This document shows, piece by piece, positions 8,101 to 29,400 of a DNA stretch of 64,000 nt. The notes below the pieces were generated by a model, which had not been told where the DNA came from, did not search any database, and saw only the letters and a list, made by a program, of their open reading frames with translations. Each line of letters opens with the position of its first letter. The first letter of the stretch is position 1. Source of the DNA: Magallana gigas (lineage: Eukaryota). The stretch lies in assembly GCF_963853765.1 (NCBI RefSeq), contig NC_088858.1, positions 46,872,001 to 46,936,000 on the forward strand, read 5' to 3'. A program made the translations under genes and the position numbers.

Positions 8101-11100
8101 TATGTTGGTTGAATCTTTATATCTCCCATCAAATTGTGTAGTTATGAGGTTTTAGAATCAATATTAATATTCACACTATGGCCAATTCCACCAAGTTTAT
8201 AAAGAAGTTCAAATGTGATTACAGTTGAACTTCGATATCTCGAACACTGATATCTCGAATACAATGGATATGTTGAAGTTAATTGTAAGTCCCAACCACT
8301 TATTTTTTTAAGTATTTTACCCTTGATATCTCGAATACTCTGATATCTTGAAGTTTTTAAACAGTTCCATCCAGTTCAAGATAACGAAGTTTGACTGTAT
8401 TTTTAATACATCTATAAATCTTCAAATACATGTATTAATAACACTTTTAGTGACCTTTATCCCATACCTCAGATATTCTATGTTCATTGAGGAATGTCCC
8501 ATTCTGGCTTCCAAAATCCATCAGATTGTACTGGCAGCTGTCAGTATTGTACTGAAACTGAGCATGGACCTGTAAAAATACAGCAAGTATGGCATATACA
8601 TAAAAATTTCAAACCTAAATAAAATCAAAAACATGCTTGATCAATGAACAAAATAATTCCACCTCCTCCCCCCCCCCCCACCTCCACATTTCAGCCTCTT
8701 AAGTCCTTTACTTTTTGTTCAATGTTGCACCAATGAATTTTTCAAGTGTTAATGGAAAATGTCAATTTTGCAAGATCAATTGGAATGATTTTCTATGAAA
8801 ATTCTTCATGAAACCTTGAATAAACTAGATTTTATACAGGCACATGTATACCATCAGAGTGTAAATGAGTACAGCCTGACCTTGCTTATGTTTATATCTG
8901 GTATGATGATGAGGTTCCCTTGGTTCTTCTCCCTTCCTATTGTCCCTCCGTCAACTGTGATGATGAAAAGTGATCCATAATCCAGATGGTCAGAGTCCAT
9001 CACAATGATACGGATACAAGGTGGAAGGTAATGTGGATCTTAATGTAAAAAATTCAAATTGTTATAAGGTTATGTGGATCTACATTTAAATGTAAAGAAT
9101 TCAAATTGTTAAAAGGTTTTGTCAATGTACATGTAAGAATTCATATTGTTGGAATTAAATTTTTTAGCATGGATCTGATTATTTTGAGTTTATGCAAATC
9201 ATCACAAAGTCGCTGCTGATCAAGAAGCTCCATAAAATCAATATCATATACAGGTATTTACTATTTTGATTCTACAAAAATAATTATACATGTATTAACA
9301 AATATAATCTTCAAAATAAAGGAAGTCCCTTAAACACCTTGATCTTCCACTGGCTCCTCCCCTTGAACAATTAGCTCATCCTCCTCTGAACTTTCTTCAC
9401 TCTCGTCTGAGCTGTCTGTCAGCTCGCCAGACTCGAGCTCAGACTCATCTGTACAGAGAGATCTACTGTCTTCCGAGTCCCGAAACTCCGATGTTTTATC
9501 ACTGGTCTGTACAAGATTCAAAGAGAGGCTCTCCACGTTGTCAATGTTGGCGCTCTTCATTGTAAGTTCAGAAGATTTGAGGTATGAATCAACATGAGAA
9601 GAGCTTTTCACAGTGGAATCATTATCATCCATTGATTCATTGAGATCACAAGACATTGACTGTGAGTCCTTTTGATCCAAGATTTCATGACCTTGAATAT
9701 CTTTTCCTAAATCAGAATTACCAACAAGTGTACATCTTGCATCACTATTTTCATGTTTGACTTTGGCCACAAAATCATAATCCACAGCATTTTGAGTGTC
9801 ATCACTAAGATTCCCTCGATAGGTGGTTTCATCCTGTACGTGACAGGTCACAAGATTTTTGTCTCCTGTTTTATCACAGTTTCCACAGACAGGAATCGGT
9901 ACAGAACCTTCAAGGTCCCCTGTCTGATCCTGGGGGTCCTCTTTTTTGACATTTTCACTAGCCGTACTGAGGAAGTCCTGTATAGTAGTATTTTGGAGAC
10001 TATATGTGGAGGTAATGGTTGTTCCACTGGAGTCGGACACAATGACACTGGAGTGAACGCTCATCTCTTCCATCACCACAGAAGAATCCGAGGACGAACA
10101 CAACTCATCACAGCCATACATACTGTACCCTGTCTCAATCATCTCGGGTTCTTGCCCACTGTTCACAGAAGAACAAACCTGATCAAATTTATCAACTCTC
10201 TCTGAACAAGTCCTTCCATTGTCTGAAACCTCACAAGTTCTTAAATCACCCTGCCTCAATTTTTCCTCAAATGCCTTCTTTAATAGTCTTATTTTCTCTC
10301 TTCTCTGTTTCCTGTTTAAACCTTGCAATTCAGATTCATCTATCTGGAATTGACTGTTCAATTTGGCATTTTCATCAAACTCCATTTGAGATACATTCAT
10401 GTCCAAATCCTCTGATGCTGCTACACTTTTCAATTGCTCATCCACCTCAGTGGCTATTTCTCCATCTTCCTCCATATTTAGTTCTCCCTTTTCTGTACAG
10501 TTTTCCTGGTTTTTTGAATTGTTACAATTCAAATTTTGCAAAGAGTCAGACTTTTCCTTACTATCATCAACCTTTAAGACTTTAGTGGTTTTATCCTACA
10601 ATGGAGAAGAAACAAAAATAATGTTGTCTTATAATTACCTGTCACATGAATATTCTTTAAAGCTGCTGTTACAGTGTCTATCCTACTCTCAGCATTAAAG
10701 TCAGCCATATCTTGTAATTGGGCCTGTGTCAAAATAAAGGTGCTTTACCAATAGATCTTTAACAGAACAATCTAATTTTAAAGGGAACATCATATCATGT
10801 TTGAATTGAAATGCACTATGTAAAAAGATGTGTCCATGAGAATTTAGGATAAAAAAGCTGATTTTTTTTTCTTCAAAAAATGTAACAAAATTAAACATTT
10901 AGTATATTTTCTCTATGGTATTTATACTTCTGGGGAATATCTACAATGCACTTCTAGTATTTTACTGCATAATTTTTTCTTATCAAAATTTATAAGTCAA
11001 TCAACATTCTACCTTACATTAACATTTTAGAAGTATCAAAGCTGAAATCTAGAGTCAATAAATGTAATATAATGCTAAACAAGAAATCAAAAACAAGGAT

Positions 11101-18338: not shown

Positions 18339-20820
18339 TTAATGTGTATCATCTTCAAACATCTTGTTATTGGCAGTTATTGTTTCATTTTTAATGAGTG
18401 ATTTCTCGTCGTTGACGTCATATTCAACAGAACACATGAATGCCTTTGTTATTCCGTGGTTGTTTATATTGTATTCTTTTGCTGAGCCGGGTGTTTCTAT
18501 ATCCAATGCGTCTCTTGAGTTCAATGAAGGGTCTTCTTTGTAAAAATTAAACGGAGAGAGGATGAACGACTGGACATTTCCTGCTGTCTGAGAAACCGGA
18601 AGTGATTCCATTGATGGAACCGAGTAAGTCCTGAGAGTTACCCAGGCAACCAAATCCTACGAAAAGCAAAAATAAATATATGTATTTAATAAATATATCC
18701 TTATAATTTTTGCGTTGATACGTGATCTTTGTCAAATTCATTAATTAAGAAACGCTGACAAATGGATTTAATATACTCACTTCATCTATAATATTCTCAT
18801 TATCATCAATGTAGTTTTGAAAACTAACTACTGGCTTCTGTGAATCCCACATGGAATATATGGAGCTGCTACGGGTTTCTGTTGGTTTGTTTTTGGTCAC
18901 TGCCAGAGAATAACGGGACCAGGTTATAGAGGGTTCGTTCCCCAACCCCGGGGCCAACAACTGCCGTGCCCCAGTACCGATTAGTTGAACAAGATAGGCA
19001 CTGGGTTCCTTATACTGAGTCTTTACCTTGTCATTGTGAAATAAATAGTAGCTCTCTGAGGTATTTTGTATTGTTCCTTCCTGTTCGGTCACTCGGAGGT
19101 TTCTCCTTATTTTTAACTGGTGGAAAATGTCGTCATCAGTTTCAGACCAGTCACTGGTATATACACTATGAGGCTCAATATCAATGCTCTCAAAACGATT
19201 GTCTTTGCCGTTTATGTCTAGATCTACTTTAAAATGAAAAGAAAATTGTCGCACTGGTGCTATAAAATTTTCCCGTAACCGAAACCCGTAACGCAGCTCC
19301 TGAGGCATATGGAATGTTCCCATTGGAAACCCTGTAAAAGAGGCCCTAGTTTCTAATGCTCCATTTAATCGGAACACAAAATCTATGATGAATTCGTTAC
19401 TACGTAACGAGAGTATAGACCGTAACGTTAATGAAATATCAGAGAGTCCAGAGAACGACTTATCTGATGATTGTCGTCGAAGAGGAAAACCAGAATCATG
19501 CTCGAACACACAGAAGGCTCTAGGAGTAATGGCAGTGTTAGTCGTACCTTCTTGTAAGGTAGTGACAGGTATGAAGGTGGCATGAACAGGACAGTCTACT
19601 GAAGGTATCAAAGACTTTGCATTCTTACCAAGTAACATGCCACTAAAAACCATATTGGAATAACGCAACCATGGCTGATGCCCGGAGGCAGAAGCTGCTA
19701 TTTCTTGAAGACTGAGTTCGTACACAATACGCTTGTTTCTGTGCCTCACATCCAGTAACTGTGGTCCGGTTGTTGCCGACATCCGGAAGTGGAAGTCCCA
19801 CTCCATATACTGAATTCTTCCCTGGTTGACAGAGTATCTATGGCCATCAGGTTCTACCATCTTTGGACTGCGCAGTCTCAACAACGGTTGAGGAACCTCG
19901 TTAAAAGGAAACATTTTCGGATCTACTGGGAAAGGCACAGGAGTAAGGATAACATTTCCGGAAAGATATGCCTCTAATAGTTCTTCGGGAGTACGATACT
20001 CCTGTCCCATAAACCTCAGCCGCTCTATCTGATACTTTCTTGGATCAGGTCCTTCTAGATTAAACAAAATGAAGAAGTCAACAGGGTTGAGCACCGGAAA
20101 TTCTACCTTGTAATGAGCCCAGTACCACACCAGTCGCTCGTTTCTACCTGATACTACAGGAGACACGGGCGTGTAATAGTCCAATGTCAAACACTGGGAA
20201 TCACAGTGAAAAAAGCTGGCCTCGAAAGTCTCTTCGAGCACGAATTTCAGAGAAAAATCAACTTGCTTCATTAATTTTCGAACGCCTCGGTTCTCAATGG
20301 ACGACATTGGTCTGAATCTGTAAGGCGCGGACGCAATAAGGCGGTGATATTCTATATTATTCAGTGGGCCCACAGCATACTCCTCCACTACAGGTGGCGA
20401 TTTGTCGCCACGGAATAACACCACACGGACCTCCCTGGGCGGCTCAGGGCTATCTAAAGAGTCAAGAAACTCCAAAGCAGACGTTTTGTTGGGCAGTAAT
20501 AGCTCTATGTTATACAAATAGCAGAAATTCGAGGCGAACCTTTTCTTCGTAAAATTAAATGTTTTGTCGGAATATAAATAATGCCCCACAGCTCGTGTCT
20601 CGTTTTCCGTCAGATCCCGGAATAAACTGCGACCCGGAGCGCCCAGAATGTGGCGTTCTGTGTCTATTTCTCGATGGCAGACGGCGCACTTAGGACGACG
20701 GACAATTTCGTAATAAATGATCATAACAGCAAACCCTACAATGAAAATAACAAGGAACACCAGCAGTAAGAGAGCATAGCCCCTCCACTGCCGGGCCGAA
20801 TCACGGTATTCCTCACCCAT
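18339..20820 (-). CDS. Copper amine oxidase (AOC1/AOC3-type) homologue, type II membrane protein, predicted catalytically dead
   Basis: Large exon ~20832-18781 joined (IDE|DLVAWVT) to terminal exon 18656-18339; possible extra phase-2 upstream exon ~21038-20992. N-terminal TM ALLLLVFLVIFIVGFAVMII. CAO motifs: YLYSIELLLPNK-like YLYNIELLLPNK, IVYELSLQE, DCPVHATF, AFCVFEHD, HFKVDLDING, WSRYSLAVTK, SSSIY, DLVAWVT, LSPFNFYKEDPS. Confidence 0.9.
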
Positions 20821-21176
20821 TCCATGCACTCTGTACAGCAAGCATTAGTTGCTGCCGCGAGATCTTACATATTTTTCTTGCATGAAAATTGAAGAGAACT
20901 GATTTTGGAAATGCCAGATTTCACGGAGCTATATTTTGTTTCTGAAACTAATTGACGAGATAAACTTTTATTTGATTTAGCTTCGTACCGTCGGTTCCAC
21001 ACTGCTTCTCTGTTAGACCATGGCGCGGCAGGAAACTGAAAATCAGATTTTCACGCTTTTTTACAAAACGACGGAAGTTTGAACGTGATAGATACACATG
21101 GAAGAGATAATACCGGGTCCTGCCCTTATTTTCCACCTAGCTTAAAATTAACCTTTGGATATACCGGTATTTCATC

Positions 21177-21179
<3 letters not shown>

Positions 21180-21224
<45 letters not shown>
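21180..21224. repeat. (GA)n microsatellite
   Basis: Pure GA run seen directly. Confidence 0.95.
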
Positions 21225-21226
<2 letters not shown>

Positions 21227-23401
21227 TTTTCATTTGTAATTTAAAGCGTATATTAAACGCAAAAGGTCTTTAATATTTATATAGAGTGATATTTTTTTAT
21301 TTCAGTTGTAGAAAAAAATTCATACACAAAAAAAGAAATCTCTAAAATTAATCAGTTAAAAGAGGCAAAATTCCAATTTAAACAGACCTAAAATCACGTT
21401 TCGGCACAGCTTTTGAGACTGGGTTAATTTCAGATGGAAACTATATCTTGATTGGCATACGAAGAAACCCGATCTCACATTGATATGAAATAGCTGGAAA
21501 TGCCGATATTCATTTAATGTATGTCATGGCTGGGGTTTTTCGCTCTCTGTAACTTAACCTTGTCTTATACATGTATGGGTTTTTTTATCTAAAAGATATG
21601 ATGTTTTATAAAAAGAATGAAATACATTGACCAAATTACTCTGGAGTGTGGTAAAATTAGGATAACTAGAATACATGGTTTCCCATTTACCTATAAATGA
21701 TATACATGTACATACAGAAGATATTAACAAATCGAACGGTAATCAATGGGTTTTTTTCAGTTCAATAATTTAAACAAAAATAATGATAAGAATTTGTAAA
21801 CTGTCTGTTCTCAGAATTTTAAAGTGCAAAGCATTCACGTACACAAATACTCAAGCACATGTTTCATCGCAATGGCCCCAGCTGCACTAGCTTGAGTAGC
21901 TTCACGTTTTTTGAAGAATTTGGAACGATTCATGCACGCATTGTAGGCCTACAACGTTAAAAATCGTGCTGCCTTTGTATTTTAATATACTATAAAGGAT
22001 GCGACGGACTAGTTCGTATAGATGGTTTCTTTGCGTTGATCAACCTCTTCACTCCTTTTGTTTTACTTTGTTAAAGTTTTATAGATTTTCTTTGTGTTCG
22101 TACAACACTGTTCAGGTCTTCATTCCTATCAATAAATAACCAAAGACAACATTTTCCCCCATTTTTGCCTTTTCTTCATTATCCTGAAATAAGTGAGACA
22201 CATACTAAATGCAGTAGGCAAAAAATGAAAATATCTTTTTAAAGAAACTGTAACGGTACTACATTGTACACTGTAACAATTATATGTGGTGCTCTGAAAT
22301 GCCAGCGACTTTTGCAGCGCTACGAATAAACATGTACGATGTATATGGACGTAAAAGAAATCACCCAAATTTTATTCAAGGGTTATTCTGTTATTTTCTG
22401 CAACTTGAGAGTATTTTGAGGTTCTCGATCTGTGGTTGAAAATAAAAAAAAAAACAAACAATGAGGTTGGACTTTTTATCTCTTTTAATATAATTGTATT
22501 CTACGTATCTATGGTATACAATAAAAAAGAAAAGTACAGCGAATTTATACAATATGTAACAACACAGTGAAACGTTGTGTTATAAATTACAGAGGATAAT
22601 GTTAAAACTTCGGTGAGGATTACTTTGTTTATTGCATGGAAAGGAAGGAGTAACAATGTAATGTAATGTGAGAAGCGGCTGATTGAGAGTAAAGCACTTG
22701 CAACAATGCAAACATCGTAAATTAATAGTTATATACAATAACATGTACTATAATTATCTTTATCATGATTGCCAGTAATCAAACACATCAATAGCTATAT
22801 ATAACGGACAGTTTATGCAGCACAGAAACGTTAAAATTTGGACCGGAAATGACGCTACAAAGCGATATTAGGCAGTTCCGGAAAATCTGCTTGGTTCCTG
22901 TGCTACATAAATCTGGCTTTTGGCAACATTTTTTTTCATACCAACTTTGTCATTTATAACAATAAACACAAAAACTACGACACATAAATATATATCATAA
23001 TCCGGACACCAAAAGGCGACCTTATTCTAAAAAAATAGAGGTATATGAATTTTATAGTTGCATACAGAAAGAGAATTGTCACAGAAAACTATAAAAGCAA
23101 ATTTATTTTTAGCATATTGCGTCACTAATGTTCAATGAACAAGGTCGATCGATCCTCTTAATATGACTTTGATGGCTTTGTTAGTTATAGCACTACCACT
23201 TCGCATGCAGGAGCTTTCTCCGATCATGATTCTATTTTCTGCCTTTACCAAACCAAACGAAAAAGGCACTAGAGCGAAAATGCAGTAGGAATTCCCCCAT
23301 ATTCTGTACCAACATTAAATCCGACCATAACATACTACAAAAACATAATATCACAGATCTGTATATGGAAAAATGGAATAAATTCTAATTTCTTGTGCAG
23401 A

Positions 23402-26400
23402 TTATGCAGCGGTCATCTGCATTCGGTTTGGTGACTGAAAGCCATTTAGCGACTGGACACTCTCGAAGACGGGCTGGTACAATTTATGGCCTCGCTGATC
23501 AGTTGAGACAAACTGGAATTGTGTCTGACCTTTTTCGATTCCTAGAACTGGGCATACCTCTACGTGTTTTGGTGTAAAGTCTGTGCGGTACATGGTACCA
23601 TCCTCAAACTTGGAGCCGCTCTGGAAAGCTGTGTTATCGGGTCTAAAGCTTCTGTTTGGCTGTAATTCGTGGGGAATGTAATGAGCCTTCTGTGTAGAAA
23701 GGCCCTCAAATGGCGCCGTGTTTGGATGGTATTCGTCTCGCATCATGGGCTTGTTTTTGTTCATTTCCCATTTCTTGTAATCATTGGCGTAACTGGTACT
23801 ACCGTCAAATGGAGCGTTACGGGCTTTATTGGCGGACGACGGGCGGTGAGCGACCACTCGATCCAATGGCAGCTCTCTGTAAGTCGAATTATGCGTGGTG
23901 GTCATTTCCATGGTACCGTCAGGCTTTTTGTACTGCTCATGCGCATGTACATAGGGGCGTTCCATTGGCCATCTTCGATAGTCGTTCCTGTTGGTAGTTA
24001 CGTCCTCTAACGGTTTCCCGGATGAGAACGCTTGGTTATCAGGCTTGAAACTTCTAGTAATCTCTCCGGGGTTGCCCTTGAAATCTCGTTTGAATGTGGT
24101 CATGTCCTCAAATGGTGCTCCTGGCCCTTTGTACTGCTCTTTGGGATGGACGTATTTTGGCTCCAGAGTGTGTTTGATGTAAGCATCCCTGTAGCCAGTC
24201 CTGTCGTTGAAGGGTGAGTCGGACATCTGGGCCGCCTGTGGGGGCTTAATCATACCGCGTCTTCGGGCATCGTGCTTAATAAAATCGTGGTGCATGGTGC
24301 TCTCCCCCTCAAACCTGTTGGTGGGCGGCTGCCAGGCGTCCTGGGAGACATAGGGACCCACGCGGCCCGACATGTCCCACTTCCGGTAGTCGGCTGTAAA
24401 GATCAAAACAAGGACTTATAAAAAGAAACAACATCAGTGTTGATTGCGAAAATGTCATACAAACAGTATAAAATTACAAAAACTGGTTAAACTTTATAAA
24501 TTATAATAATGATTTTTTTTTTATAGATGCGACACAAACGAATGATTTTTTGGTGGTACCATTTGGTATTGAAAAGTTATCAAACATTGGTAAGGATCTA
24601 ACATCATTATAAAAAGAAGAAAAAGACGAAAACGTTAAACTGTAAACAAGTGGCCTTACGGTAATTTTGGGATACGTTAAGTGAAATAACTGGTGGCTAA
24701 TTACTTTTATAGGTGGGCTCTCCCTCAAATCTGCCCTGAGCCAGACGCTGACCATCATGTTTAATAGCTCTCGCAGGTGCCTGGTATTTTTCTGAAGTAA
24801 ACCAAAAAAGATAATTATTAATCTACAAAGGTGCACGCCATCTCCACATTTTATGAATAAAGTGTTAGTAGGTTGAAGCCAAGTGAACCTCAATGATACC
24901 TTTTGAATACTATCAATATTATCATAAGTGGCCTTAAAAACTTACAAGACTCACCAACAATAAAAGCAGTGAATCTTAAGGGTCCTTCCAAAAACAAAAA
25001 TACACAGTATATACTAGTACATATACTACAATATTTCCGCCTGTCTCAAAGTTCAATCTAAAACTACTACAATATTAGAACCATTTTAACAAGACCTTGG
25101 ACTTTCGGTTGGACGTAGCAATCTATCTCTTGCGTCAAAAACAAGTTAAAAATGATATGGTTTCAAGCGAAATATACACCGATTGCGTAGTCTTAGCTCA
25201 ATAGCCAGACAAATCTTGTTGATTTCAAAGAGCAATGGCTGAGTGGCCAGCAATGAAACAGACAGGCCTACGTTACATCGCCGTTTGATACATCTACCCA
25301 AAGTCCAAGCTCTTGTTAAAATGGTTCTTCATGTGATATTCTAGGTCCTTCCAAACACACTACAATATTACCGAGGATATTTAAGGTCCTCCAAAAGAAT
25401 ACGACAATATACTGTTTATATTTAAGGTTCTTTATAATACTACAATATTACCGAGGATATATAATGTCTTCCAAAAGATTACAATATTAGAGCATATTTA
25501 AAAGTCCTTCCAAAGACTACTAAAATAAAACCGAGGATTTTATCTTAATTATTCTAAGTTTTCTCCAAATTCTCATGAGATTGCAATCTTGCTAACTTGA
25601 ACAAAATATACTTCTATGGTAAAAGAAATTATTCTCTAGTCGGAACTTAAAATTCCAAGGGCAATTTACTTTGTAAATAATGAATAGTCTAATGAGTCCT
25701 TTTTTTATTTATATACTTAATGCTCCAAATAATTAGAGTTAAGCTTAGATTAAACTAGCTGTTCTAAATATCTTAAGACTTATAAAGACTGTGCTATTTA
25801 ACTTTAAAATCAGTTCAATGTGTATTCGTAAACATTCAACCCAACCATGACAATCAGGTAACGGGGTGATATGGGGAGTACACGTGGGCTAAGGTTACCT
25901 ATTGTTACCTATATACCCTATCCCGAGGATTAGCCCAATTCATGTACATCGTGGCTGTACACTCTGAGATTGATTTAATGATTTAAGCCTCAATACTTAA
26001 TCCGAAATAAAAACACTGAAGGGGATTTGTCCAAGAGATTACGGACAAGCGGTATACGTGACGATTGGTAACACCTATGGAGGGTAATAAAGTGAACTAA
26101 CTTTTACATGTATACACAACAGCCACCGGGAATTACTTATTATACATATATATTTCCCATTGGATTCTCGATCGCATAAATAGTAATGTCAGCTTGAATC
26201 AATAGAAAATACTAGCAGTACAGAAAGACGTAACTGGGAATACAATTATATAAATCATAAATAATCATAGCCAAGTACTTGAATGAGGCAGTCCAGAAGG
26301 ACTGTCGTTATGTTGAAGCCCCGTGAGTATTCCGTAACCGACCGACTAAATGTAAAGGGAGGAGGGATTACCGTTCTATGCATAACACGACCCACGGAGG

Positions 26401-29400
26401 AATCCCTTACCGAGTGCTTATGTAGATAAATAAACCTAACAATGTTTATTGAAAATTTATAACTAAGATATTGGGGAGCTTTCAAGATAAGATGTCGCAC
26501 AAAACGAAGATCTCCAGTGTAAATTGATATATGACTTAGGGTCTAGAGTATTGATTGGGATTTTTTATTGCTATGTACCTTTGCCTAGCAACGGGACGCT
26601 ACATCTGTTGTTGATATTGATATATGGACTTAATGGAGCACTGCCTTCCCGATATCGGCATAAATACTTAAATTTTGCATTACAATTATGTTTGAGTTCA
26701 GATTTTGGTTTCTGAAATGATCAATCCTTAACATTGTCTCTTCTCATAAAAAGGGGCGTTGGTAATAATTTGAAAGGAGCAGTTTTATTGATTTACCGCA
26801 GGAAGTCTCTAAAAATCAGTATCCAAATCATATATATATGCTGTCTTTTAGCTGCCGAACGATTGATTTTATTGGCAATTACGTAAAGTTTAAATATTTT
26901 TTTAACTGCCATACTAAAAAACAAAGTTCAATTACCCGTGAACTCCTTCTTGTAAGACGTCATCCCCTCCATCTCACCCTCGGGTCTCCTGTACTGGTCA
27001 GGAACCCTCACAAACGGTTTCTCCAGGGGGTGCTTGATGAAATCTTGCCTAAAAAAATATACATAGTTATGTATATATTTTTTTTTTCATCACGATTAGC
27101 CAAGGATTTCTTTCTTATTCACTGTCTCAATCTCACTCTTACACACAAGGTTTACAAAAGGTTCACATGAGAACAAAAAATTAATCAAAATAATGATAAA
27201 CGTTCAAATCTTACTACTTGTATTAGTTCATACACTTTGATTGATCACAAAAAAGAGAAATAATATCATTTATGGGATTTTTTTAAAAAATTTGTTCATT
27301 TCTTTTTATCTTCTAAAGTTCTAGAGGGTCCTTACATCTTATCGTCTAACTGAGAGAAATGATATTGTGGGTCTAGGTCAAAAAATCCGCTCTTACATCG
27401 ATAAAGTTTGTTGGTGCAACAGCCTCTATGCTTATTGGCTTCGTCAACGTTTTTTTTTTCTCGCATGCTTCAAACACATGAAATAATGGTTTTTACACAA
27501 AAATCAATTAATCACGGGTCGTTGCGTTTTGATGTCCGGAATATGCCAATTGTGTTTTTTTTAAGGATATATACACACAATATTGGATAATAAAAATATA
27601 TACACAAGTTTAACAACAACCGTGACAACACAAGAAAAAAATCCATTGAGCAAAGTCAGGTGCTAGTCGACAACGCCGTATAAACAGAACAACCGAATAA
27701 CAGTTTATATCACAATGTTAGTATCAACTTGGGGGAAATTAGTTTTTTGATTAGCCAATTCAAAATTTTAAAATCCGGTACTCTGGTAGCCCGGATTTCC
27801 GCGATGTAGCTCTCGGTGATATTCTTCAGCTTTGGTTCTTTGACGAGCTGGCATGGTATCAATTTTGAATCCATCATCAAAGGACTTGCTAGAATTGCCC
27901 TGCAGGGGTCGACTTTTACCATAAGCAGGTTTTCCAAATAAAACATCAAGATCGTTTGCGGATTTTCCAAAAGGCGTTTCCCATGGTGCAAGGACCTTTG
28001 AGGGCCCGTTGTCTTCTAAATGGATATTTTTCTCTTTCAGCGCGGGGTCTTTTCTAAAGATGTCGTTTGGGTCCTTCTTGAACGTCTGCTGAACCTGATT
28101 AATATCCGGTGTTTCCCATGGAGCCTTTGTTTTAGTGTTACGGGATCCAAGTTTGACGACATTTTCTTTGTCCTTTCTGAAAAGATCGTCATGATTTTTC
28201 CCTCGGGTTCTGGAATCTGCAGATTTATCCCACGGCCACCTTGACTGTGGCAATGCGGATTTCTGCGGAGATGCTGACATATCCCATCTACTCTCATCGT
28301 GTACGGAAGATCTGAAGCTCTCTGCGCTTGACAAGTTAGACGAACGGTCCGGTCTCATTGCAGATTGGGGAGACGATGCTTTTTTAACCTTAAACCCTTT
28401 ATTGGTTTCTAGATCCAGAACAAGCCAGTATGGTTCGTCGCTCTCGTTATTTCTTCTTTGTGTGTCCTCTGTAGAATTGAGCCTTGACTTCTGGTTCCCG
28501 GAATTTTGTCTGCTCTGTCGTCTGCTAATGCTTTCATTTTCAAGCCTGGTCATGAAGTCATCTTCTACCCTTGGTGAATAGAAGTCGCCAATCACACCCT
28601 GAGAAACTTCCCTCTTTGTGAGATTCTTTATGGACACTTTCTCTTCATGCTTATTGTAGAAATCACCTATTTTCCTCTCTGAAGCTTCTCTTTGCTTGCA
28701 TTCGCCAAGTTTGTTCTTTGGTTTTCTTCCAATCTGATGAAGTCCATCTATGGACTGTGCTTTTTGCGGCATATTGCTACCTTTAGAAGAAGCTATATAC
28801 ATCCTTGTGTCCCCTTTGTCCAACCTCTTAGCCAGAGTACCTTCCCAGTATTTGTTTGCATCCCTTTGGGTGTTTCCAACTTTCCCTCCTCCCATTGAAC
28901 TTTCCTTTCTCTGTTCCCATTCCGACGTCCACTGAGCATTTGCATCTCTCTCTTTTTCTTTAGTTATGCCTGCTGGATTCCTTGGAGAAATTTGTTTCTG
29001 TTTTCCGTTAGGTTTTTTGCGATTTTGTTGTTTACTGTCATTATCTCCTTTGCTCACTTTCTCTGGTTGTTGGGTTGACTTAGGAACTGCCTCCTCTTCA
29101 ATTTTCATTGATTTTACAGATTTACCGTCACCTGCATCTTTATCCATAAAACTCTGAACTGTGAGTTCCTTCTTCACTGAATCGGGACCCTTGGCTTCTT
29201 GTCCACTTGTTGATGCGTTCTTGTTTCTGAAATATCCATCCCTACCACTAGCCAAGTCTGCCTTCCAATCTTCCCCAGCTTTATTGTTGCTTTGTTTCTC
29301 TCCCTCTAAACTCGCCATCTCTGTGGTATTCTTTTCTTCAGTTAAACGTTTCTTGCTAGGTATCCAAAGGTTCTTACATTCAGTGCACGGCCCTCAATCT

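What the first reader, a model, noticed from the sequence alone, without database searches (positions are those of the whole stretch)
18339..20820. Intact copper amine oxidase homologue that has lost every catalytic residue (membrane pseudoenzyme)
Seen: an ~800-codon frame with no stops, a type II TM anchor and strongly conserved CAO scaffold motifs. Established: CAOs need the TPQ-precursor Tyr in T-x-x-N-Y-D/E, an Asp base (Y-x-D) and three Cu-binding His (H-x-H plus the His after DLVAWV). Here the NYD position reads S-N-E (LRSILSLRSNEFIIDF, codon 19398-19396), the Asp is Asn (RYSN, 19656-19654), H-x-H reads R-Q-F (PVRQFSFHFKVD, 19251-19243) and the third His is Ser (DLVAWVTLRTYSVP, 18623-18621). 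Five independent active-site losses with the fold retained suggest selection for a non-enzymatic role. Inference: a surface amine-binding, adhesion or decoy receptor, or a regulatory partner of an active paralogue (vertebrate AOC3/VAP-1 already has an adhesion role).
Basis: partly seen in the sequence, partly recalled or inferred. Interest (0 to 1): 0.85.

Follow-up and report, generated by a model that had tools for sequence, protein, structure and literature searches.

The report
Catalytically dead oyster copper amine oxidase
This oyster gene encodes a membrane-anchored protein with the full copper amine oxidase fold but none of the residues needed for catalysis; it is expressed, correctly spliced and conserved across oysters, scallops, mussels and ark shells, so it is an old "dead enzyme" kept for an unknown non-catalytic job.

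Summary
The frame is not continuous. It is two exons (20820..18781 and 18656..18342, minus strand) split by a 124-nt GT-AG intron, and RNA contigs from two studies show that intron removed.

The spliced 785-aa protein is a full-length copper amine oxidase (CAO) homologue with an N-terminal membrane anchor. It lacks the Asp base (F), the TPQ tyrosine (N), all three Cu histidines (R, F, S) and the TPQ-stabilising Tyr (A). Nine paralogues in the same genome keep all of these.

It is not a pseudogene. Intact, syntenic orthologues with the same intron exist in four oyster genera. dN/dS is 0.22-0.24 against a congener (dS 0.15) and 0.08-0.20 between genera.

It belongs to a 100/100-supported clade covering ark shells, scallops, mussels, pearl oysters and true oysters. 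Every member lacks the Asp base, and the other catalytic residues are lost to different degrees: the mussel copy keeps Tyr and 3 His, and oysters keep nothing.

The fold (model of the orthologue) and the homodimer (model only) look retained. The function is unknown; my best guess is a non-catalytic binding role at the cell surface. I found no paper describing this. Interest is moderate.

The parts
20821..20872 (-). 5' UTR (minimum extent seen in RNA)
   Evidence: The RNA contig of run X1 begins at 20872 and runs through the ATG. An out-of-frame ATG at 20825-20823 sits 5 nt upstream of the start codon.
18781..20820 (-). Exon 1 coding part, 680 codons, from ATG 20820
   Evidence: The ORF has no stops. 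phmmer aligns residues 65-679 to human DAO 3hi7. Pfam finds PF02727 and PF01179.
20710..20781 (-). N-terminal hydrophobic membrane anchor (residues about 14-37)
   Evidence: This is the only segment with a Kyte-Doolittle 19-residue mean above 1.6 (maximum 3.45). It is conserved in the orthologues and in most molluscan CAOs. It is predicted as a long helix (residues 3-40) in the orthologue model.
19687..19689 (-). A378, at the position of the conserved TPQ-stabilising Tyr
   Evidence: This column is 98% Y in 44 canonical molluscan CAOs. In the dead clade it is H, A, T or S.
19645..19647 (-). F392, at the position of the catalytic Asp base
   Evidence: It aligns with D of K-Y-L-D in 3hi7 and with D of D-Y-V-D-S in canonical molluscan CAOs, where the column is 98% D.
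19393..19401 (-). S474-N475-E476 in place of N-Y-D (N475 occupies the TPQ tyrosine position)
   Evidence: Shown. The same residues are present in congeneric alleles.
19243..19251 (-). R524-Q525-F526 in place of the Cu-binding H-x-H
   Evidence: Shown. The triplet is invariant in four oyster genera.
19216..19224 (-). D533-L534-D535 of K-V-D-L-D, a retained scaffold motif
   Evidence: D533 and D535 are invariant in the dead clade and across 40 molluscan CAOs. Their role as ligands of a structural Ca2+ site in animal CAOs comes from my own knowledge and was not tested here.
18657..18780 (-). Intron, 124 nt, GT..AG, phase 0
   Evidence: The sequence shows the splice signals. RNA contigs of runs X1 and X3 skip exactly these 124 nt, read as CT..AC on the + strand. 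The same intron position is found in Saccostrea, C. virginica, O. edulis and a congener.
18342..18656 (-). Exon 2 coding part, 105 codons, followed by stop 18341-18339
   Evidence: It aligns from D-L-V-A-W-V to human DAO residues 644-696, E 2e-10. Pfam PF01179 positions 365-407 match.
18621..18623 (-). S692, at the position of the third Cu-binding His
   Evidence: T-Y-S-V-P-S aligns with F-L-H-I-P-H of human DAO. The column is 100% H in canonical molluscan CAOs.
18432..18434 (-). C755, conserved C-terminal cysteine
   Evidence: It is conserved in the four oyster orthologues. The equivalent C766 of P0003 is at least 90% conserved in 40 molluscan CAOs. Its role as an inter-subunit disulfide is inferred from vertebrate CAOs (own knowledge).
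23405..24373 (-). Upstream neighbour: large exon of a SAXO1-2 gene (synteny marker, not part of the gene)
   Evidence: Pfam PF05217, E 5e-36. It is 92% identical to the C. virginica neighbour. A SAXO1-2 gene lies upstream of the orthologue in Saccostrea, C. virginica, O. edulis and Mytilus edulis.

Best explanation
The gene encodes a 785-aa pseudoenzyme derived from a copper amine oxidase (CAO).

Shown:
- It has two exons, and the mRNA is made and correctly spliced.
- The protein keeps the N-terminal membrane anchor, the D2/D3/D4 domain scaffold, both intrachain cysteine pairs, the C-terminal cysteine and the K-V-D-L-D / D-L-V-A-W-V scaffold motifs.
- Every residue that canonical CAO chemistry needs is replaced: the Asp base, the TPQ tyrosine and its N-Y-D context, three Cu histidines and the TPQ-stabilising Tyr.
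- Nine paralogues in the same genome keep these residues.
- The gene is the oyster member of one orthologous clade found in ark shells, scallops, mussels, pearl oysters and true oysters. The Asp base is missing in all of them. The remaining catalytic residues are lost to different degrees.
- Purifying selection still acts on the gene.

Inferred:
- Without His ligands it cannot hold Cu. Without Cu and the Tyr it cannot make TPQ. It therefore does not oxidise amines or make H2O2.
- It sits in the membrane as a type II, probably disulfide-linked, homodimer with the CAO-like ectodomain outside the cell.
- It works by binding rather than turnover, as a cell-surface binding or adhesion protein. It may use the former substrate funnel or the clade-specific conserved residues, most of which lie in the D2/D3 domains.

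The ligand and the physiological role are unknown.
For: Gene model and expression: the sequence shows the splice signals. RNA contigs from two studies join 18781|18656, and polyA reads lie in the orientation expected for a minus-strand RNA.

Homology and register: PDB phmmer gives E 3.5e-81 to human DAO, with the residue-by-residue alignment shown. Pfam agrees. Multiple alignments give the same register.

Paralogues: all nine other CAO genes in G000 have D, N-Y-D/S, H-x-H and H.

Selection:
- Intact orthologues with the same intron exist in Saccostrea, C. virginica and O. edulis. pN is 0.17-0.21 against pS 0.61-0.74, and omega is 0.08-0.20.
- A congener at dS 0.15-0.16 gives dN 0.036 and omega 0.22-0.24, with p = 7e-15 against neutrality and identical dead residues.

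Orthology: SAXO1-2 lies upstream in four oyster genera and in Mytilus.

Clade: it has 100/100 support in a careful ML tree of 37 rows and 100 in quick trees of 53 and 62 rows. The catalytic patterns (Asp, N, Y, His, His, His) are:
- Mytilus: YNYHHH
- Tegillarca: MQHFQH
- Scallops: YNQSHH
- Oysters: FSNRFS / YGNRFK

Relaxation is concentrated at active-site columns 378, 392, 474, 475, 477, 524, 526, 692 and 698, while 76 scaffold columns stay at least 90% conserved in both groups.

Fold: the AF2 model of the 65%-identical Saccostrea orthologue has pLDDT 84.9 and TM 0.81/0.90 to 3hi7.

Dimer: the model of the D4 domain x2 scores 0.85 against a best control of 0.00. The mark was reached by 21 of 30 solved homodimers and 0 of 23 monomers, run agreement was at least 80% and pLDDT at least 78. 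The pass may come from memory of solved CAO dimers. Predicted interface positions are slightly more conserved within the clade (0.68 vs 0.63, p = 0.011).

Biochemical premise: there are three strictly conserved His and an Asp base. Of 12 substitutions of the Asp in E. coli CAO only Glu kept activity, with kcat down 6.4e4-fold (PMC3382800).
Against: - No biochemical data exist; inactivity is inferred from sequence.
- Omega of 0.22 and 70% identity to C. virginica show that this protein evolves 4-5 times faster than its SAXO neighbour (92% identity, omega 0.03), so constraint is only moderate.
- The charge distribution around the hydrophobic segment does not by itself dictate the type II orientation. 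That orientation is inferred from AOC3 and from the conserved cysteines and 5 N-x-S/T sequons.
- The structure and dimer models are of the Saccostrea orthologue, not the window's own protein, and the dimer pass may reflect memory of solved CAO dimers.
- The expression level seen is low, and the tissue is unknown because run labels are coded.
- Nothing here identifies a ligand, so the 'binding/adhesion' step is a guess by analogy with VAP-1.
Confidence: 0.8

Rival explanations
1. It is an enzyme with new chemistry. The CAO scaffold was kept because a different set of residues, or a different cofactor, now catalyses another reaction.
For: Sequence around the former active site is very well conserved among oysters: G-L-S-D-I-S-L-T-L-R, R-E-N-F-I-A-P-x-R-Q-F-S-F-H-F-K-V-D-L-D and E476. 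Some residues are invariant in the clade but not in canonical CAOs (W384, H236, H159-R160, D557).
Against: Across the clade the former catalytic positions are not fixed to any new residue set. Position 524 is R/E/H/S/F, 526 is F/N/Y/H/E/Q, 475 is N/C/S/Y/Q/H and 392 is F/Y/H/Q/M. That pattern looks like relaxation rather than a new conserved catalytic constellation. Many of the conserved stretches coincide with the predicted dimer interface. There is no new Pfam domain or cofactor motif.
Confidence: 0.07
2. It is a non-catalytic partner or regulator of an active CAO paralogue. It forms heterodimers, or competes for substrate or partners, and so anchors or modulates an active subunit.
For: CAOs are obligate dimers, and the dimer interface appears retained. 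Nine apparently competent paralogues exist in the same genome. Heterodimers of vertebrate AOC2/AOC3 have been reported (own knowledge, not checked here).
Against: The closest paralogue in the genome is only 33-35% identical. The homodimer is confidently modelled, and the conserved C-terminal Cys fits a symmetric disulfide. No co-expression or interaction data were obtainable. A heterodimer model was not run, because unrelated-protein controls cannot discriminate between paralogues.
Confidence: 0.08
3. It is a shell-matrix or extracellular-matrix structural component, shed from the membrane, related to the 'copper amine oxidase' found in bivalve shell proteomes.
For: A CAO is listed among prismatic-layer shell matrix proteins of Pinctada and is expressed in the mantle edge (PMC4660305). 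A C. gigas CAO gene (CGI_10026457 / EKC31553) is listed as its homologue (PMC5379566).
Against: The Pinctada margaritifera shell protein H2A0M3 is only 37% identical to the oyster orthologue. That is the level of canonical paralogues (38% to canonical Pinctada P0299), not of the dead-clade Pinctada protein P0090 (48%). I could not map CGI_10026457 to this gene. The membrane anchor is conserved.
Confidence: 0.05
4. It is a decaying gene: a young or slowly dying pseudogene that merely happens to be still open and transcribed.
For: All catalytic residues are lost. It evolves faster than its neighbour. Within the species, 10 nonsynonymous against 5 synonymous differences separate the window allele from the common allele. 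The RefSeq model of the C. virginica orthologue is flagged LOW QUALITY PROTEIN.
Against: Open, intron-conserving orthologues exist in at least 8 species of 4 pteriomorph orders, despite synonymous divergence at or near saturation between oyster genera. Omega is 0.22 at unsaturated dS, p = 7e-15. The within-species ratio is not significantly different from omega 0.23 (p = 0.12). An independent C. virginica contig is intact. The mRNA is spliced.
Confidence: 0.02

Closest known systems
Human diamine oxidase AOC1 (PDB 3hi7) and canonical animal copper amine oxidases
   Same: The full-length domain architecture (N2/N3 plus the catalytic D4 domain) is the same. Sequence match is E 3.5e-81 at about 31% identity, and the orthologue model superposes at TM 0.81/0.90, rmsd 2.8 A. 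The two intrachain Cys pairs align, and the dimer is predicted.
   Different: The Asp base, TPQ Tyr, three Cu His and TPQ-stabilising Tyr are all replaced. It has an N-terminal membrane anchor instead of AOC1's signal peptide.
Vertebrate AOC3 / VAP-1 (type II membrane CAO with an adhesion role)
   Same: It has a short N-terminal tail, a single membrane anchor and a large CAO ectodomain. Sequence match is E about 5e-67 and TM 0.78-0.79. VAP-1 shows that a CAO ectodomain can serve in cell adhesion (PMC3382800).
   Different: VAP-1 is an active oxidase whose adhesion function involves its catalytic site acting on counter-receptor amines. This protein has no catalytic site. It is not an orthologue of AOC3: molluscan CAOs form their own clade, and the anchor is general to molluscan and cnidarian CAOs.
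The nine other CAO paralogues of the same oyster genome (L005-L013)
   Same: They belong to the same family and have the same one-large-exon layout. Several carry the same intron before D-L-V-A-W-V.
   Different: They are 28-35% identical to this protein, and all keep D, N-Y-D/S, H-x-H and the third H. They fall in other clades.
Orthologues in other pteriomorph bivalves (Mytilus edulis P0233, Tegillarca P0230, scallops P0006-8, Pinctada P0090)
   Same: They form one 100/100 clade. All lack the Asp base. The anchor is shared, along with the D-S-A-R-R-W-R and Y-Y-E motifs that flank it. Synteny with SAXO is shared with Mytilus.
   Different: They are intermediate states. Mytilus keeps the Tyr and all three His, scallops keep two His, and ark shells keep one His (with the Tyr still present in the unnamed relative P0005). 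Only oysters have lost everything.
Plant CuAO clade I (zeta)
   Same: [quoted passage not shown] That makes it a possible precedent for a CAO lineage with a non-canonical site.
   Different: It is a different kingdom and an independent event. I did not check which residues are actually lost there. No loss of the Cu ligands is claimed in that paper.

Membership tests
Copper amine oxidase superfamily (Pfam PF01179/PF02727; homology) | Significant match to the catalytic-domain and N2-domain profiles over their full length | tested here: met
   PF01179 matches at E 6.5e-65 (profile 1-363 in exon 1 and 365-407 in exon 2). PF02727 matches at E 2.9e-08. PDB phmmer gives E 3.5e-81.
Copper amine oxidase superfamily (Pfam PF01179/PF02727; homology) | CAO three-dimensional fold | tested here: met
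   The AF2 model of the 65%-identical orthologue P0003 has pLDDT 84.9 and TM 0.81/0.90 to 3hi7. The window's own spliced protein was not modelled, because it has no reference.
Active copper amine oxidase (EC 1.4.3.21/22) | TPQ precursor Tyr in the N-Y-D/E consensus | tested here: not met
   The window reads S474-N475-E476.
Active copper amine oxidase (EC 1.4.3.21/22) | Three Cu-binding histidines (H-x-H plus the His after D-L-V-A-W-V) | tested here: not met
   The positions are R524, F526 and S692.
Active copper amine oxidase (EC 1.4.3.21/22) | Catalytic Asp base | tested here: not met
   F392 occupies the position. In E. coli CAO only Glu is tolerated here, with a 6.4e4-fold loss of kcat (PMC3382800).
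Active copper amine oxidase (EC 1.4.3.21/22) | Conserved Tyr that stabilises TPQ (HPAO-1 Tyr305 equivalent) | tested here: not met
   A378 occupies the position; the column is 98% Y in canonical molluscan CAOs. Equating this column with HPAO-1 Tyr305 rests on my reading of the motif, not on a structure superposition.
Active copper amine oxidase (EC 1.4.3.21/22) | Amine oxidation with H2O2 release; bound Cu and quinone | not testable with these tools
   This needs recombinant protein.
Active copper amine oxidase (EC 1.4.3.21/22) | Homodimer through the D4 domain | tested here: inconclusive
   The model of P0003 residues 320-770 x2 scores 0.85 against a best control of 0.00. The mark was reached by 21 of 30 solved homodimers and 0 of 23 monomers. 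The pass may come from memory of solved CAO dimers.
Pseudoenzyme (catalytically dead homologue maintained by selection) | Catalytic residues lost while the fold is kept | tested here: met
Pseudoenzyme (catalytically dead homologue maintained by selection) | Expressed and under purifying selection, with conserved orthologues | tested here: met
   Spliced RNA is seen. Omega is 0.22-0.24 with p = 7e-15 and 0.08-0.20 between genera. The clade spans four pteriomorph orders. No protein-level evidence is available.
VAP-1/AOC3-like membrane adhesion CAO | Type II membrane anchor with an extracellular CAO domain | tested here: inconclusive
   A strong single N-terminal hydrophobic segment is present and is modelled as a helix. 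The orientation is inferred from conserved Cys pairs and sequons and was not predicted with a topology tool.
VAP-1/AOC3-like membrane adhesion CAO | Binds a counter-receptor on another cell (Siglec-9/10 for VAP-1) | not testable with these tools
   No partner is known. Orthology to AOC3 is not supported, because molluscan CAOs form their own clade.

The most novel reading that the evidence does not exclude
A dead-enzyme lineage of the copper amine oxidase family, predating the radiation of pteriomorph bivalves, has been kept as a single-copy, membrane-anchored surface protein. Its active site decayed in an ordered way: first the catalytic base, then the copper ligands, then the TPQ tyrosine. 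Living species preserve the intermediate stages. The mussel copy has Tyr and 3 His but no base, so it might still make TPQ without turnover. Scallops have 2 His, and oysters have none. The protein would act as a non-catalytic receptor or adhesion molecule, for example a 'substrate trap' for amines or protein lysines, with new constraints on the D2/D3 domains.
Probability: 0.2. Interest if true: 0.7.

Novelty: new variant of a known kind. Interest (0 to 1): 0.5.

Why it matters
Copper amine oxidases are textbook cofactor-generating enzymes. I found no paper that describes a conserved catalytically dead lineage of this family in animals: there were 0 papers with 'copper amine oxidase' plus 'pseudoenzyme', and the 4 papers with 'pseudoenzyme' plus 'amine oxidase' were on unrelated topics, judged from titles and abstracts.

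Databases call all these proteins 'putative amine oxidase [copper-containing]', so enzyme counts and pathway inferences for oysters, scallops and mussels overstate CAO capacity by one gene each.

The clade offers a natural series of partly dismantled active sites. That is useful for asking which residues are needed for TPQ biogenesis and which for turnover. It also gives an invertebrate test case for the idea, raised by VAP-1, that the CAO ectodomain can serve as a binding module independent of catalysis.

In practical terms this is a well-defined, single-copy, expressed target for knock-down in commercially important bivalves. The function is unknown, which limits the immediate impact.

Tried and rejected
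1. Pseudogene reading. Rejected by intact orthologues, the conserved intron, omega well below 1 and spliced RNA.

2. Excess of nonsynonymous differences within the species. There are 11 N: 5 S against RNA contigs and 10: 5 against allele L017. Most public alleles share the same 8-9 replacements relative to the window allele, so this is one haplotype difference. The ratio is not significantly different from omega 0.23 (p = 0.12). I dropped it as evidence of relaxation.

3. Shell-matrix lead. The Pinctada shell CAO H2A0M3 is 37% identical, which is the level of canonical paralogues. The lead is not supported but not excluded. I could not map C. gigas CGI_10026457/EKC31553 to this gene: no sequence was available in the papers or their supplements.

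4. A second homology search with the clade alignment found no new members. A search with P0011 did find new ones.

5. Tissue or stage of expression. Run and sample names are coded and the single read-laying run was used, so this is not determined.

6. Heterodimer modelling with an active paralogue was not run. Unrelated-protein controls cannot discriminate between CAO paralogues, so a pass would be uninformative.

7. Long-branch attraction as the cause of the clade. This is unlikely: the careful tree gives 100/100 support, the internal order broadly groups members by bivalve order, and synteny with SAXO links oysters and mussels independently.

8. Earlier notes of the scan held only the same finding and neighbours.
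Full report
**What is in the sequence**

On the minus strand an ATG at 20820 opens a frame that runs 680 codons to 18781. There a GTGAGT follows, and the frame soon hits a stop. After a pyrimidine-rich tract ending in AG at 18657, a second frame runs from 18656 for 105 codons to a TAA at 18341-18339. The two ORFs are in different frames, and the 124 nt between them contain stops.

The splice is real. Exon 1 aligns to human diamine oxidase (3hi7) up to chain residue 642/643, and exon 2 starts at residue 644. RNA-derived contigs from two different studies (X1, on record as RNA; X3, probably RNA) join 18781 to 18656. They skip exactly 124 nt with CT..AC on the plus strand, which is GT..AG on the gene's strand. 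A few polyA RNA reads lie in the orientation expected for a minus-strand transcript. The spliced product is 785 aa with no stop.

**Family and register**

Pfam finds the CAO catalytic domain (E 6.5e-65, continued in exon 2) and the N2 domain. The best solved relatives are human AOC1 (E 3.5e-81), bovine and human AOC3-type enzymes (E about 1e-67 to 1e-71), then fungal and bacterial CAOs.

The residue-by-residue alignment to 3hi7 gives these replacements:
- N-Y-D-Y becomes S-N-E-F, so the TPQ tyrosine is N475.
- H-T-H becomes R-Q-F (R524, F526).
- F-L-H-I-P-H becomes T-Y-S-V-P-S (S692).

The same columns are recovered in MAFFT alignments with 44, about 110 and 61 homologues.

The catalytic Asp is different. 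K-Y-L-D-V-G of human DAO and D-Y-V-D-S of canonical molluscan CAOs align with N-M-V-F-S-G, so the Asp position is F392 (19647-19645).

One further active-site residue is gone. The Tyr in the column that is 98% Y in canonical molluscan CAOs is A378. I read this as the TPQ-stabilising Tyr mentioned in PMC3382800.

The premise that these residues are indispensable is standard. There are three strictly conserved His and an Asp base, and of twelve substitutions of the Asp in E. coli CAO only Glu retained activity, at 6.4e4-fold lower kcat (PMC3382800).

**What is retained**

- A single very hydrophobic segment (residues about 14-37) follows a short charged N-terminus. The same layout is found in the orthologues and in most molluscan and cnidarian CAOs, active or not.
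- The two intrachain Cys pairs of human DAO align with C206/C210 and C410/C437.
- A C-terminal Cys (C755) is conserved in oysters and in at least 90% of 40 molluscan CAOs.
- K-V-D-L-D and D-L-V-A-W-V are invariant.
- There are five N-x-S/T sequons.

An AlphaFold2 model of the 65%-identical, full-length Saccostrea orthologue has mean pLDDT 84.9 and pTM 0.84. It superposes on human DAO at TM 0.81/0.90 and rmsd 2.8 A. I used the orthologue because the window's spliced protein has no single reference.

A homodimer model of its D4 domain scored 0.85 against a best control of 0.00. The mark was reached by 21 of 30 solved homodimers and by 0 of 23 monomers. The runs agreed in at least 80% of contacts, and pLDDT was at least 78. 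Because CAO dimers are solved, the pass may come from memory. Predicted interface positions are slightly more conserved in the clade than other D4 positions (0.68 vs 0.63, p = 0.011).

**Not a pseudogene**

The window's genome (564 Mb; the window lies on contig C6) has nine other CAO genes. All of them carry D, N-Y-D/S, H-x-H and the third H, so the loss is specific to this gene.

Orthologues were fetched from Saccostrea cucullata, Crassostrea virginica and Ostrea edulis. All are intact, all have the intron at the same codon boundary, all carry a SAXO1-2 gene upstream, and all show the dead residues. The window has the same SAXO exon at 24373..23405.

Between genera, synonymous sites are at or near saturation (pS 0.61-0.74) while pN is 0.17-0.21. 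Omega estimates are 0.08-0.14 (NG86) and 0.14-0.20 (ML).

A cleaner test came from contigs of a congeneric species that are 92% identical in protein. There dS is 0.15-0.16, dN is 0.036 and omega is 0.22-0.24. With 66 nonsynonymous against 72 synonymous differences, p = 7e-15 against neutrality, and the residues at the former active site are identical.

Constraint is real but moderate. The neighbouring SAXO exon has omega 0.03 and 92% identity to C. virginica, against 70% for this protein.

**The clade**

Searches found relatives with degenerate sites in scallops, an ark shell, Mytilus, Pinctada and several unnamed assemblies.

In ML trees these form one clade together with the oysters. Support is SH-aLRT 100 in two quick trees and 100/100 in a careful tree of 37 rows. 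The stem is long (about 0.5), and the internal order groups members by bivalve order: Arcida, Pectinida, Mytilida, then pearl oysters plus true oysters. The canonical paralogues of the same species sit elsewhere.

Mytilus edulis also has SAXO1-2 upstream of its copy. This supports orthology independently of the tree.

All 15 members lack the Asp base, which is replaced by M, H, Y, Q or F. The other catalytic residues differ by lineage, as shown in this table (order: Asp, N, Y, His, His, His).

| Lineage | Pattern |
|---|---|
| Mytilus | YNYHHH |
| Unnamed relative of Mytilus | YNYHYH |
| Ark shell | MQHFQH |
| Scallops | YNQSHH |
| P0010/P0011 | HNSEN- |
| Oysters | YGNRFK / FSNRFS |

So the base was lost before the pteriomorph orders diverged. 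By my own knowledge of bivalve history that is an early Palaeozoic event, which I did not test here. The rest of the site then decayed independently in each lineage, and the window's protein is the end state, with 0 of 6 residues kept.

Columns that are at least 90% conserved in 44 canonical CAOs but degenerate in the clade are almost all active-site columns (378, 392, 474, 475, 477, 524, 526, 692, 698). Meanwhile 76 columns remain conserved in both groups.

The clade also has its own invariant residues that canonical CAOs lack: Y37, H159, R160, F203, F204, H236, W384, D557, F716 and S724. Many of these lie in the D2/D3 domains.

**How unusual it is**

Among about 110 cluster representatives (50% identity) closest to the clade profile, about 80% keep D-N-Y-H-H-H. 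About 20 show some degeneration, including independent cases in gastropods such as Lottia, Patella, Biomphalaria and Bulinus. Dead CAO homologues are therefore not unique to this gene. This one belongs to the oldest and best-supported group that I saw, and it is the most complete loss.

In the searchable literature I found no description of a CAO pseudoenzyme in animals. A 2025 survey says only that a plant CuAO clade has lost the T/S-x-x-N-Y-D motif, and it treats molluscan CAOs as one clade without comment on the active sites (PMC12058724).

**How it most likely works**

Shown: it is a transcribed, spliced, selectively maintained, membrane-anchored CAO-fold protein that lacks every canonical catalytic residue.

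Inferred:
- It holds no Cu, makes no TPQ and has no oxidase activity.
- It is a type II, disulfide-linked homodimer at the cell surface.
- It acts by binding.

Which ligand it binds is unknown. By analogy with VAP-1/AOC3, a CAO ectodomain can take part in cell adhesion (PMC3382800), and I consider a binding or adhesion role the most likely.

The alternatives are a partner of active paralogues, a matrix component, or a new enzymatic chemistry. I hold each at 5-8%. The shell-matrix idea was checked indirectly and not supported: the Pinctada shell CAO H2A0M3 is only 37% identical to the oyster orthologue, which is the level of canonical paralogues.

**Verdict**

The core interpretation, a pseudoenzyme under selection, is supported. 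The specific function is open. I rate it a new variant of a known kind: a pseudoenzyme lineage of the CAO family, annotated in databases as a putative oxidase. Interest is moderate.

Noticed in passing
window 20823-20825 (minus strand): An out-of-frame ATG lies 5 nt upstream of the start codon. It has a weaker context (T at -3) than the main ATG (G at -3, G at +4). It would open a short overlapping uORF, and the RNA contig includes it.
   Followed up: no
window 21171-21233: A (CT)n/(GA)n dinucleotide microsatellite of about 55 nt lies about 350 nt upstream of the start codon. Read laying skipped it as a repeat.
   Followed up: no
window 23405-24373 (minus strand): This is a large exon of a SAXO1-2 (stabilizer of axonemal microtubules) gene: Pfam E 5e-36, 92% identical to C. 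virginica, omega 0.03. The SAXO-CAO-like gene pair is conserved in four oyster genera and in Mytilus edulis, where SAXO genes flank the CAO-like gene on both sides (L019).
   Followed up: partly
window 27771-29318 (minus) and 9333-10541 (minus): Two long ORFs (516 aa and 403 aa) have no Pfam match at E 0.001.
   Followed up: partly
P0059 (C. virginica XP_022307944.1) vs L002:6010-8459: The RefSeq model of the C. virginica orthologue is flagged 'LOW QUALITY PROTEIN', but an independent ENA contig carries an intact two-exon gene. The flag may therefore reflect an assembly error in the reference rather than a broken gene.
   Followed up: partly
L018:10001-23767 (Argopecten irradians): The scallop member of the dead clade lies tail-to-tail with another CAO gene (831 aa) about 5 kb away. 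No SAXO gene lies within 10 kb.
   Followed up: no
P0025 (Lottia), P0277 (Patella caerulea), P0287 (Biomphalaria pfeifferi), P0295 (Bulinus truncatus), and unnamed P0107, P0109, P0122, P0174, P0190: Other CAO homologues outside this clade also have degenerate catalytic sets (for example HNHQQN, HNNNRH, VNDHQH, LSFWGH). This suggests repeated, independent origins of dead CAOs in gastropods and other invertebrates.
   Followed up: partly
window 20404-20412 (residues 137-139, R-G-D): An R-G-D tripeptide in F-R-G-D-K is nearly invariant in molluscan CAOs, dead and active alike. In the orthologue model it sits at the end of a beta-strand just before a turn. Its conservation in active paralogues suggests a structural role rather than an integrin motif.
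   Followed up: no
alleles P0001, P0046-P0057 vs window: Most public alleles of this species share the same 8-9 replacements relative to the window's allele (F22L, S190T, V222A, K238N, N400H, A430V, R473H, T561N). The assembled haplotype is therefore the minority form at this locus.
   Followed up: partly
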